DNA from: Saccostrea echinata
Lineage: Eukaryota
NCBI RefSeq assembly: GCF_033153115.1
Contig: NW_026889758.1
Location: 50,096,001 to 50,160,000 of the forward strand
Length of the DNA: 64,000 bases
Reading direction: 5' to 3'
Shown: piece by piece, positions 49,901-52,900 of the stretch
How positions within the stretch are numbered: position 1 is the first letter of the stretch
Layout of the letters: each line of letters starts with the position of its first letter
The notes under the pieces: model-generated
Told to the model about the DNA's origin: nothing
Seen by the model: the letters and a program-made list of their open reading frames with translations, nothing else
The model's database searches: none
Position numbers and translations under genes: made by a program

Positions 49901-52900
49901 ATTTTGTTCATGTTTTATAATAATGTGTTACTTTGATTTGACAGCTTCAAGCCGTGCAGAATATAGTGTCTCTATGTGAAAAAGCCCTGAAGAATGTTTC
50001 CGACTTCCTGGCAGAAAGGTAGAATGAAAAATGCCCTACTGATTCATCAAGTTTGTTTATTTATTTGTAATACAATATTCAATGTACCTTTACATACATG
50101 TACATAATTGATAAATTGAATTTCACAGTGATGCACCAAAGTCAATGGATGTAGACAAAAACAAAAAAGAGGACAAAGGAGTCAAAAAGGAAAAGGAAGA
50201 GCCAAAGGAAGGGTGAGCTCACACTTATTAAAATTTCAAAAATTACCAACTTACAATTTTTTTAACTGATATGCATGAAATAAGTTAAAAAAAAAATAAA
50301 CTTGCAGTAAGATGATAAGGTGGTGCTAAAGACCAACAATTTGTCTAATGTTTTAGAGAGAAGAAGGAGGAAGCAGCCATACCACGAGTTCTGAAGGGGG
50401 TGATGAGGGTTGGAGTTCTTGCCAAGGGTCTACTGTTACACGGGGACCTAAATGTAAACCTTGTGGTTCTGTGCTCAGAGAAGCCAACCAGGACTTTGCT
50501 GGAGAGAGTGGCAGATGCTCTTCCTAAGCAAATAGCTGTATGTACACTAAAATAATTTATTGAATCCCCAGTATTTTTTTTTTACAAGCTGAATACTCTC
50601 TGAATGTTTTTTTTTTTGTTTTGTTTAGAGGTAGGAAAATGGGTTTGAATGTTTTTGATGAATTTCAGGCTATCACAGATGAAAAGTACGAAGTGAAGCG
50701 ATGTGTGGAAGAGGCGGCCATTATTGTCTCCAGCGAGAGTGATCCCAAAACATCCTGTTCTGTGACCTTGACCTCACCAGTTATGAGGGAAACTCAGCTT
50801 GCTGATGGAGGTCAGTCACCTTTACCTTGCATGGTAGAGAGGTCATGGACATGACAACTCTACCATCACAGTATTTATCCCTATGACTTGTAGATTAATT
50901 ATTGAAGAATTTCCTTTATTATTTTTCGGAAGACTTTTTACTTTGTCAGTCAATCTATATACTGTACATACATTTATATTTCAGTAATATTGCAAAAAGT
51001 TAGAAATTCTTTAATTCTATACCCAATAGAATGACTGATAGTGGTAAGAGGAATTATTCAGGCTGTACTTCATAATTACTATGATTATAATGATTTTGTG
51101 TTCATTTTTTAACCTTATGCCTGGATTATTTCTTGAGATGTCACTAATACTGATTTATTTTCCCACTCATGGAAAGCCTTATAGAGTCGACAGTTTGAGA
51201 GGAAGGATTTTTGACCATTGATGGTGCTTGCCAGCCCTCTGCCCAAACTTGTGACTAGAGCTTGTGTGCAACATTACTGAGAATAATTTGTTTTTATAGG
51301 CTTCTTTGGTACTTTTTTTATAATCGTAGAATTTTATACATTCACATCAGCTTTACCATACTAATCAAAAGTGAAATTTCCTGTTTTCATTTTTCTGGTG
51401 TATTTTTTTTCTATTACCATTTTATGCTGTTTTCTGAAATGTTCTTGTTCATATCCACATTTTATCATCTTTTTGGTTTCTGATCTAAATATTAAGATTC
51501 TAGCAGTATGTTTTTGAAAGTAGTATGAGATGGTAGCAAATTTTTATCTAGATTAAAGCTCCAAAGAATGTTATACAATATCGTTTTTATGTGTTTTAAC
51601 TTTCTGTCTTTCTAGTTGAACTTTTATTTCTTATAACTGATTTGATTAGTCTCTTTCTTTAATTTTGTCAGTATCTTTTTATTATGCTAAAGCTGTTTGT
51701 TTTTAAAATCCCTGCACACACATATAAGGTCACTAGAGTTGGCTAGGGCTGGCCCTCTAAGATATTTAACACCTGATTAAGAGAGATTCATCATTTTAAT
51801 GGTCAAACACCCGTTCCTGAGTCACGTGGTTGAATGCTTGTATTAATACAGAGACATCCACTGTCACGGTTAAAGACCCACCAGATGTTTTGGACAGGCA
51901 GAAATGCCTGGATGCCTTAGCCGCTCTTCGACATGCTAAATGGTTCCAGGTTTGAAACTTTTTTATATACTTTGCAGCCTTATGAGAAGAAGTTTGCAAT
52001 CCAAATACTTTGTTGATATCTGTACATTTGAGCATATTTTGCAAGTATTTTAAATGATCAATCTTTGTTTGAATGAAAAAAAAAATTCCATTATCACTTT
52101 CAGGATAAGTTAATACATGTAGTTCTCTGACAAACTGTTAAGCTTTTGAAATGGTCAGATTTGCTACAAAAGTTTGACATGCATTGGAAAATATCTCTTT
52201 CCATTTCTTTTGTGGCAAATCGCCTTCACAGCAATTTACCTTAGCAATGTTTTTCAAGTCACCTGAGCCATAGGTTGTTTTAATATTGATATTCTGATCT
52301 AAATCTGTCTGGCATTTTAGACTTCATTTCAGACACTGATTGTCATATCACCAATATGTGCTTCATTGTCTTAGAAAAAATGATTGTTTTTAGAATCCAA
52401 CTTGGCTACAGTAGCTTTTGATAAAAATAATTGTTGATACACTTCATTCCTGTTTAGCAAACTTGTCATAGATGCTCCTCTGATTTTGAGGAGATTTGTC
52501 TGAACATTATTCTTCATATTTGCTTCCAACTGTCTTCGTTATACAAATGTGTTTGCAGTATGTTAATACATGAAAGTAATTTAGGGTCATTATATGCATA
52601 CTTGTGAAGATCAGATTGAAACATAAATTCATGAAACATTAGATTCATGCACTGTAGCACATCCCTGTGTGTTATTAATCTAACGAATCCAGTCTAATTC
52701 TTGTGAGCAATGTGGTCTATGAGTCCCCTCTTGCTTGGAAATTGCTCATGTGAAGAATGTAATCTACCTGTAGGTAAGCTGTATGGTATATAAAAGTTCT
52801 ATATTATACCGATTTTGTCAGAGAACTTGGGCTTAAACTTTTTATCTTTAACCATTTTCCTCTGGGGAGAAAAAGTTTTGTCAACTCAAATTGGCCATAT

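What the first reader, a model, noticed from the sequence alone, without database searches (positions are those of the whole stretch)
51174..51851. Long-range RNA duplex in a ZFR intron coupling a poison 3' splice site to the normal one: candidate autoregulatory switch
Seen: two GC-richer islands in intron 50811-51851 pair in perfectly nested order around a ~440-nt U-rich loop. The blocks are TGTGTGCA 51263-70 with TGCACACA 51713-20; GTGAC 51251-55 with GTCAC 51729-33; GCCAGCCCT 51230-38 with AGGGCTGGC 51745-53; ATGGTG 51221-26 with CATCAT 51789-94; TTTGACCATT 51210-19 with AATGGTCAAA 51798-807; AGGAA 51200-04 with TTCCT 51814-18; TCGAC 51187-91 with GTTGA 51829-33; AAGC 51174-77 with GCTT 51836-39. 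The stem base encloses a second acceptor, TTATAG|AG (51184/51185), in the same phase as the normal ACAG|AG (51851/51852). It reads E-S-T-V-stop (TGA 51196-98) in the middle of the DZF domain. The 3' arm occupies the branch/pyrimidine region of the normal acceptor, which lacks a good pyrimidine tract. There are no TIR or TSD features, and the stem has bulges and G-U pairs. Known: ZFR/Zn72D bind dsRNA and regulate splicing and ADAR editing, and RNA-binding proteins often autoregulate through unproductive splicing. Inference: ZFR (with ILF2/ADAR) senses its own level by binding this duplex and switching between full-length mRNA and an NMD or truncated isoform.
Basis: partly seen in the sequence, partly recalled or inferred. 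Interest (0 to 1): 0.85.

Follow-up and report, generated by a model that had tools for sequence, protein, structure and literature searches.

The report
Ancient RNA stem in ZFR intron
The inverted repeat in this bivalve ZFR intron is not a transposon relic but the local form of a long-range RNA stem whose two core boxes are kept from bivalves to an insect, next to a small frameshifting exon, which makes it a strong candidate for an old splicing control of a dsRNA-binding splicing factor's own gene.

Summary
All eight blocks lie where stated. The arms pair far better than shuffles (z -6) and are single-copy in the 923 Mb genome.

The decisive result comes from orthologous ZFR introns found in metagenome contigs:
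- The 5' core (51205-51218) and its complement (51799-51812) are both kept in five other taxa: a heterodont bivalve, three unplaced lophotrochozoans and an insect. The rest of these introns cannot be aligned.
- The 3' box sits 53-56 nt before the acceptor in five of the six.
- The stretches just inside the boxes differ in sequence, yet each pairs best with its own partner (1 of 720 permutations).
- Folding each whole intron pairs the boxes with probability 0.84-0.98.

The next intron carries its own conserved complementary boxes. The 98-nt exon between the two introns is frameshifting, and skipping it gives an immediate stop.

RNA contigs of four runs show normal splicing plus unspliced copies of both long introns. 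Transcripts of other taxa show exon skipping or intron retention.

ZFR autoregulation is plausible but untested. The scan's earlier notes hold nothing on ZFR.

The parts
50669..50810 (+). Upstream exon (142 nt, ends in phase 1), DZF region of ZFR
   Evidence: Spliced contigs in four runs. Neighbouring exons hit Pfam DZF_N and DZF_C.
50811..51851 (+). Intron A (1041 nt, GT..AG). It is spliced normally in all four runs and is also present as an unspliced contig. Read-through stops at 50852-54.
   Evidence: Joint 50810>51852 in X1, X5, X6 and X21. Contig 50781-51879 in X1, X5 and X6, and a partial one in X21. ORF read-through.
51174..51184 (+). A0 motif: conserved AAGCCTT followed within 3-10 nt by AG.
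   Evidence: The same heptamer lies 36-53 nt before the 5' box in L028, L031, L032, L033 and in L037; the insect has a variant. No junction was seen and the matrix score is -6.0.
51205..51218 (+). A5 box, the conserved 5' half of the stem core (GGATTTTTGACCAT)
   Evidence: Exact in L028, L029, L031, L032, L033 and L042. The 16-mer AAGGATTTTTGACCAT (51203-51218) occurs here and once more in the own genome, as chance predicts.
51220..51270 (+). Inner extension of the 5' arm (lineage-specific sequence)
   Evidence: Pairs with 51713-51795. The cognate versus non-cognate test of inner flanks gives 1-2 of 720 permutations.
51271..51712 (+). U-rich loop. The distance between box starts is 137-737 nt across the six taxa (591 nt here).
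51713..51795 (+). Inner extension of the 3' arm (lineage-specific), with a bulge of about 30 nt
51799..51812 (+). A3 box, the conserved 3' half of the stem core (ATGGTCAAACACCC). It starts 53 nt before the acceptor.
   Evidence: Exact in L028, L031, L032 and L042, with one change in L033. It lies 53-56 nt before the 3' splice site in five of six taxa. Box-to-box pair probability is 0.84-0.98 in whole-intron folds.
51813..51839 (+). Outer 3' arm over the presumed branch region. It pairs with 51174-51204 in this species only.
   Evidence: Pairs listed. The outer-flank cognate test shows no signal (210 of 720).
51852..51949 (+). 98-nt exon (DZF_N end). Skipping it shifts the frame.
   Evidence: Joints, Pfam. 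Transcripts L038 and L047 lack it.
51950..53374 (+). Intron B (1425 nt), also present unspliced in RNA contigs. It holds nested conserved complementary boxes: B1 51969-51984, B3 52053-52065, B4 53051-53063, B2 53082-53097.
   Evidence: Contigs 52004-53402 (X1) and 51923-53402 (X5). Boxes. B1/B2 pair probability is 0.88-0.93. B2 is unique in the genome.
53375..53469 (+). Next exon (DZF_C start). It begins GCTAG, so joining it directly to 50810 reads GGC TAG.
   Evidence: The same GCTAGR start occurs in L031, L032, L033 and L042, and stops are seen in the skipped transcripts.

Best explanation
The inverted repeat is this bivalve's version of an evolutionarily old long-range RNA stem inside the ZFR intron that precedes a 98-nt frameshifting exon of the DZF domain.

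Shown:
- The stem has an invariant core of 9 contiguous pairs plus GG/CC. A lineage-specific inner extension co-varies at the helix level.
- Its 3' half lies at a fixed distance of about 53 nt from the acceptor.
- The downstream intron has its own conserved complementary boxes, starting about 20 nt after the donor.
- Both long introns persist unspliced in RNA assemblies.
- In other taxa the exon is skipped, which gives an immediate stop, or a flanking intron is retained.

Inferred: the stems set how fast and how well the two flanking introns are removed, and so whether the exon is included. This partitions ZFR transcripts between productive mRNA and detained or stop-containing forms.

More speculative: ZFR itself, a dsRNA-binding splicing regulator, binds these stems and so limits its own level.

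My odds: conserved functional RNA structure 0.9; it modulates splicing of this exon and its introns 0.6; ZFR is the sensor 0.35; the 51185 acceptor is used 0.15.
For: - Conservation: both boxes are present once each, in order, in orthologous introns of five more taxa, and nothing else in those introns aligns. A seventh contig, L029, reaches only as far as the 5' box.
- Taxon placement by ZFR protein similarity: the window is a pteriomorph bivalve, L033 and L029 are heterodont bivalves, and L042 is an insect (82% to a damselfly).
- Helix-level covariation of the inner flanks: cognate -17.2 against -10.5 kcal/mol, with 1-2 of 720 permutations for n = 15-60.
- Whole-intron folds pair the boxes in all six taxa.
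- Not a repeat: only self matches in the genome, while a control inverted repeat at 2740-3680 gives 93 matches.
- Intron B boxes are conserved and complementary. The two substitutions seen in B1 are both pairing-compatible.
- Unspliced contigs of both introns occur in four runs, at depth 12-35% of junction plus intron, while a 383-nt intron nearby has about 0.
- Exon-skipped transcripts L038 and L047 carry an immediate stop. L034 retains intron B. Crinoid isoform X2 reads through the orthologous donor.
- Literature: ZFR binds conserved complementary intronic regions and detained introns.
Against: - The core boxes are invariant, so there is no nucleotide-level compensatory change in them. L033 even has a C.A mismatch.
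- There is no strand asymmetry in arm stability (-76.7 against -75.5).
- The outer flanks and the intron B flanks show no covariation.
- L037 and an oligochaete-like group lack the A boxes.
- Contig depths are a poor measure of isoform level, and no raw reads were available.
- No skipping or alternative-acceptor joint was among the 15 listed for this species (4 more were not shown).
- There is no evidence of any kind that ZFR binds here.
- Taxa of the metagenome contigs are inferred from protein similarity only.
Confidence: 0.6

Rival explanations
1. Constitutive splicing aid. The stems only compact two unusually long introns of a gene whose other introns are about 100 nt, which helps exon definition. 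There is no regulation or feedback, and the retained or skipped forms are noise.
For: The stems are intra-intronic and loop out most of each intron. Most assembled transcripts of other taxa are normally spliced. The normal junction dominates in all four runs.
Against: Retention is specific to these two introns; the 383-nt intron has about 0 depth. Skipped or retained forms were abundant enough to be assembled in four taxa other than the window's. The GCTAG start that gives an immediate stop on skipping is kept in the taxa with the boxes. In L031, B2 lies 900 nt from the acceptor, so the stem does not simply bridge the splice sites.
Confidence: 0.22
2. The stem couples a poison acceptor at 51184/51185 to the normal acceptor, and switching to it yields a stop after four codons.
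For: The AG lies in a conserved motif (AAGCCTT plus AG) found 36-53 nt before the 5' box in all taxa with the box. Use of the aligned AG gives an early in-frame stop in the window, L028 and L031 (read). The stem brings this site next to the real acceptor.
Against: No 50810>51185 joint is among the 15 listed from four runs (4 more were not shown), though contigs drop rare forms. The crude matrix scores it -6.0, against 7.4 for the normal site, and at least 12 other AGs in the intron score higher. There is no early stop in L032 or L033. None of about 14 transcript contigs from other taxa carries an insert here.
Confidence: 0.12
3. Decayed foldback or MITE insertion, or an old inverted duplication, with no function.
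For: Inverted repeats are common in this window, and the strongest one belongs to a dispersed family. The arms show no strand asymmetry.
Against: It is single-copy. Both halves are conserved at orthologous positions from bivalves to an insect, with co-varying inner flanks.
Confidence: 0.02
4. The boxes are separate protein-binding or DNA-level elements, and their complementarity has no role in pairing.
For: The cores never vary, as expected for sequence-specific recognition. The core contains a GGTCA/TGACC half-site-like word.
Against: Three independent box pairs (A5/A3, B1/B2, B3/B4) are each complementary. My own estimate of the chance level is about 3e-4, 4e-6 and 1e-8. The flanks extend the A helix with different sequences in each taxon.
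Confidence: 0.04

Closest known systems
[quoted passage not shown] 2021, PMC8052449; Raker et al. 2009, PMC2724269; Ate1 R1-R5, PMC7797038)
   Same: Two short intronic boxes, conserved and complementary, lie hundreds of nt apart next to an alternatively processed exon. Several box pairs occur at one locus.
   Different: Not listed in the main texts searched. Conservation spans bivalves and an insect, which is much deeper than most described cases. The host gene encodes a protein reported to bind exactly this kind of structure.
ZFR-bound detained introns and PCCR-flanked exons in human cells (Haque et al., bioRxiv 10.1101/2022.06.15.495552)
   Same: An exon flanked by inefficiently spliced long introns that carry conserved dsRNA elements.
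   Different: That work describes targets in other genes and reports no action of ZFR on its own pre-mRNA. Nothing here shows ZFR binding.
Autoregulation of RNA-binding proteins by unproductive splicing coupled to NMD (for example RBM39 and SRSF3 poison exons; PMC10477243, PMC6547761)
   Same: A conserved stop-generating splicing outcome in the gene of a splicing regulator.
   Different: Here the stop arises by skipping an essential 98-nt exon or by intron retention, not by a poison exon. Feedback is only inferred.
MITE or foldback hairpins in introns
   Same: An imperfect inverted repeat of about 100 nt arms around an AT-rich loop.
   Different: Single-copy, with no terminal repeats or target duplication, and orthologously conserved.

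Membership tests
Conserved long-range intronic RNA structure (PCCR) | Both regions conserved in orthologous introns of distant species | tested here: met
   A5 and A3 boxes occur in six taxa including an insect, in introns that otherwise cannot be aligned.
Conserved long-range intronic RNA structure (PCCR) | The regions are complementary and are predicted to pair in context | tested here: met
   12-13 of 14 positions pair. Whole-intron MFE pairs 8-9 of the 9 core pairs, with probability 0.84-0.98.
Conserved long-range intronic RNA structure (PCCR) | Compensatory change or covariation | tested here: inconclusive
   The core is invariant. Helix-level covariation of the inner flanks is significant (1-2 of 720). 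B1 shows two one-sided compatible changes. No aligned double-sided compensatory pair was found.
Conserved long-range intronic RNA structure (PCCR) | Physical RNA-RNA contact in cells | not testable with these tools
   Needs PARIS, RIC-seq or DMS probing.
MITE / foldback transposon | Dispersed copies in the genome | tested here: not met
   Only self matches. The same search gives 93 matches for the inverted repeat at 2740-3680.
MITE / foldback transposon | Terminal inverted repeats with target-site duplication; presence or absence between relatives | tested here: not met
   No duplication at 51174/51839. The element is present at the same place in all taxa with the boxes.
Unproductive-splicing (AS-NMD) autoregulatory unit | A recurrent isoform with a premature stop | tested here: met
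   Retained introns A and B here. Exon skipped with an immediate stop in L038 and L047. L034 retains intron B. Crinoid isoform X2 reads through the donor.
Unproductive-splicing (AS-NMD) autoregulatory unit | [quoted passage not shown] | not testable with these tools
   Needs CLIP, knock-down or over-expression, and an NMD block.
Alternative (poison) 3' splice site at 51184/51185 | Junction reads from 50810 to 51185 | tested here: not met
   Not among the 15 joints listed from four runs; 4 more joints were not shown. These are contigs only, so rare use is not excluded.
Alternative (poison) 3' splice site at 51184/51185 | Acceptor-like sequence, conserved | tested here: inconclusive
   The 12-site matrix gives -6.0, but an AG after the conserved AAGCCTT is present in every taxon.
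ZFR (zinc finger RNA-binding protein) | DZF_N plus DZF_C domain, with three zf-met fingers upstream | tested here: met
   Window exons hit DZF_N and DZF_C. The closest full-length relatives have 3 zf-met plus DZF and are named ZFR. The zinc-finger exons of the window itself were not examined.

The most novel reading that the evidence does not exclude
ZFR carries an ancient feedback device, at least protostome-wide. Conserved dsRNA stems in the two detained introns flanking a frameshifting DZF exon are bound by ZFR's own zinc fingers. High ZFR then diverts its pre-mRNA to intron detention or exon skipping with an immediate stop.
Probability: 0.3. Interest if true: 0.85.

Novelty: new member of a known kind. 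Interest (0 to 1): 0.75.

Why it matters
Intronic RNA structures conserved between molluscs and insects are rare. Here three complementary box pairs frame a single frameshifting exon in the gene of a protein that is itself reported to bind conserved intronic duplexes and detained introns.

If the stems control that exon, this gives a compact test system, since a few 14-16 nt boxes can be mutated and then restored. It could show how long-range RNA structure sets splicing outcome, and whether a dsRNA-binding splicing factor senses its own level through structure rather than through a sequence motif.

It also shows that a plain-looking intronic inverted repeat in a repeat-rich mollusc genome can be told from transposon debris by orthologous comparison with metagenome contigs.

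Tried and rejected
- Transposon origin. Whole-element, single-arm and pattern searches of the own genome found only the locus itself. The control family at 2740-3680 was found 93 times. Rejected.
- Strand asymmetry as a sign of RNA-level selection: none.
- DNA-level palindrome continuing through the loop: weak (z 2.7-3.3) and not pursued.
- Editing: no A>G excess in the arms in contigs. Contigs cannot show partial editing.
- Rfam: nothing in intron A. There is one weak snoRNA-like hit in intron B.
- Outer-arm covariation: none. Intron B flank covariation: none.
- L037 has no A duplex. The oligochaete-like group L055-L090 has no boxes and no conserved complementary 9-mers.
- Antisense-ORF homologues only showed that the close relative keeps the 3' arm.
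- Human truncated ZFR (alternative start site, PMC5861047) and the miR-579 feedback (PMC5546720) are unrelated to this intron.
- No human sequence was handled, and no comparison with vertebrate ZFR introns was made.

Full report
**Observation.**
- The two arms (51170-51275 and 51705-51845) form 71 pairs (65 Watson-Crick, 6 G-U) at -76.7 kcal/mol. Shuffles give -44.3 +/- 5.3, so z is -6.1.
- The MFE and the centroid of 51150-51870 both keep the long-range stem.
- A scan of the whole window with 120-nt segments showed about 8 other inverted-repeat loci that pair as well or better, and about 18 below -60 kcal/mol. Energy alone does not make this one special.
- The arms show no strand asymmetry.

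**Gene context.**
- The flanking exons translate to DZF_N and DZF_C.
- The nearest full-length relatives carry three zf-met fingers plus DZF and are named zinc finger RNA-binding protein.
- By similarity to a named panel, the window comes from a pteriomorph bivalve: 76-82% to oyster, pearl oyster, mussel and scallop.
- The gene model was handled exon by exon by reference.

**Not a transposon.**
- Searches of the 923 Mb genome with the element, with each arm and with arm patterns returned only this locus.
- The same tool found 93 matches for the strongest inverted repeat of the window, at 2740-3680.
- B2 is unique in the genome. The A5 16-mer occurs once more, as the control predicts.

**RNA evidence (contigs of four runs, three organism labels).**
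- All four runs are spliced, and all show the normal joint 50810>51852.
- No joint to 51185 is among the 15 listed; four joints were not shown.
- Three runs hold a contig that covers the whole intron with both exon edges (50781-51879), and the fourth holds its 3' half. Depth is 12-35% of junction plus intron.
- The next intron (51950-53374) is covered likewise. A 383-nt intron further on has depth near zero, so genomic DNA is an unlikely source.
- Read-through of the donor stops at 50852-54.
- Organism C is a close relative (exons about 5-6% different) and has the same intron at the same length.
- Contig depth is a rough measure, and contigs drop rare forms.

**Splice sites.** I built a crude matrix from the 12 other acceptors of this segment. 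The normal acceptor scores 7.4, which is typical (leave-one-out range -2.5 to 9.5). The candidate at 51184 scores -6.0, below at least 12 other AGs of the intron. Weak pyrimidine tracts are the rule in this gene.

**Orthologous introns.** A scan of metagenome contigs with the 60-aa exon gave 80 loci. tblastn with the window's exon peptides located the same intron in genomic contigs.
- Sensitive blastn and MAFFT showed that nothing in these introns aligns except short islands.
- The 5' box (window 51205-51218) and the 3' box (51799-51812) each occur once, in that order, in L028, L031, L032 and L042 (exact) and in L033 (one change in the 3' box). L029 reaches only as far as the 5' box.
- The 3' box starts 53-56 nt before the acceptor in five of six taxa. 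The distance between box starts is 137-737 nt.
- Placement by protein similarity: L033 and L029 are heterodont bivalves, L028, L031 and L032 are unplaced lophotrochozoans, and L042 is an insect (82% to a damselfly over 379 aa).
- L037 and an oligochaete-like group lack the boxes.

**Structure tests.**
- The core gives 9 contiguous pairs, plus GG/CC beyond two mismatches.
- The stretches just inside the boxes differ completely between taxa, yet each pairs best with its own partner: cognate mean -17.2 against -10.5 kcal/mol. Only 1-2 of 720 permutations reach the cognate mean for flank lengths of 15-60 nt.
- Folding each whole intron on its own pairs box with box in the MFE (9 of 9; 8 of 9 in L033), with mean pair probability 0.84-0.98.

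**A larger system.**
- A conserved AAGCCTT followed by AG lies 36-53 nt before the 5' box in all lophotrochozoan loci.
- Intron B has nested conserved complementary boxes. B1 lies 19-26 nt after the donor (51969-51984). B3 is at 52053-52065, B4 at 53051-53063 and B2 at 53082-53097.
- All four B boxes are present in the window, L028, L031, L032, L033 and L037. The insect has B1 and B2.
- The two substitutions seen in B1 both keep or improve pairing.
- Whole-intron folds pair B1 with B2 at probability 0.88-0.93.

**The exon between the stems.**
- It is 98 nt, so skipping it shifts the frame.
- The following exon begins GCTAG in the window, L031, L032, L033 and L042, so a skip reads GGC TAG.
- Two assembled transcripts from other taxa lack exactly this exon and hit that stop at once: L038 (crustacean-like) and L047 (lophotrochozoan-like).
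- L034 is spliced upstream but runs on into intron B.
- A crinoid RefSeq isoform X2 reads through the orthologous donor of intron A and ends 20 residues later.

**Literature.**
- ZFR is reported to bind throughout detained introns, to regulate exons next to them, and to be among the proteins most enriched on conserved complementary intronic regions (bioRxiv 10.1101/2022.06.15.495552).
- I found no description of ZFR or Zn72D acting on its own transcript, or of these boxes.
- The scan's earlier notes hold nothing on ZFR.

**Verdict.** By conservation, the stem is a real and very old RNA structure. The particular poison acceptor does not. Feedback by ZFR remains an inference.

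Noticed in passing
window 51950-53374: The intron after the 98-nt exon has its own conserved, nested complementary boxes: B1 51969-51984 with B2 53082-53097, and B3 52053-52065 with B4 53051-53063. They are kept in six lophotrochozoan loci, and B1/B2 also in an insect.
   Followed up: yes
L038:1560-1640 and L047:600-670: Assembled transcripts of two other taxa lack the 98-nt exon. The junction runs straight into a stop codon.
   Followed up: yes
L034:1839-2232: A transcript-like contig of a lophotrochozoan is spliced upstream but continues from the 98-nt exon into intron B, which includes a B1 box.
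   Followed up: partly
P0025 / P0158 (Antedon mediterranea XP_071964418 and XP_071964417): Annotated crinoid isoform X2 diverges from X1 exactly at the end of the orthologous exon and reads into the intron. This is a truncated DZF form in a deuterostome.
   Followed up: partly
window 53236-53320: Weak Rfam match to a C/D box snoRNA (snoMBII-202, 21 bits against a gathering score of 40, E 0.32), about 55 nt before the acceptor of intron B. It is not conserved in the other loci by blastn.
   Followed up: partly
window 2740-3680: A strong inverted repeat (-169 kcal/mol) that belongs to a dispersed foldback or MITE-like family with at least 93 matches genome-wide.
   Followed up: partly
window 5581-6421, 31501-32041, 45481-46261, 57961-58741: Further strong inverted-repeat loci (-96 to -129 kcal/mol). 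Their nature was not examined.
   Followed up: no
window 49064-49170: A GC-AG intron (donor AAA|GCAAGT) in the same gene, supported by spliced contigs.
   Followed up: no
window 52279-52692: Contigs of the related organism C do not cover this part of intron B. This may be an insertion or deletion difference between the relatives.
   Followed up: no
L028, L031, L032 intron A: These three loci share further complementary boxes that are absent from the window: CTTTCTGAGGAACAT with its complement, and GAAGGCTTT with AAAGCCTTC. This suggests additional or competing helices.
   Followed up: no
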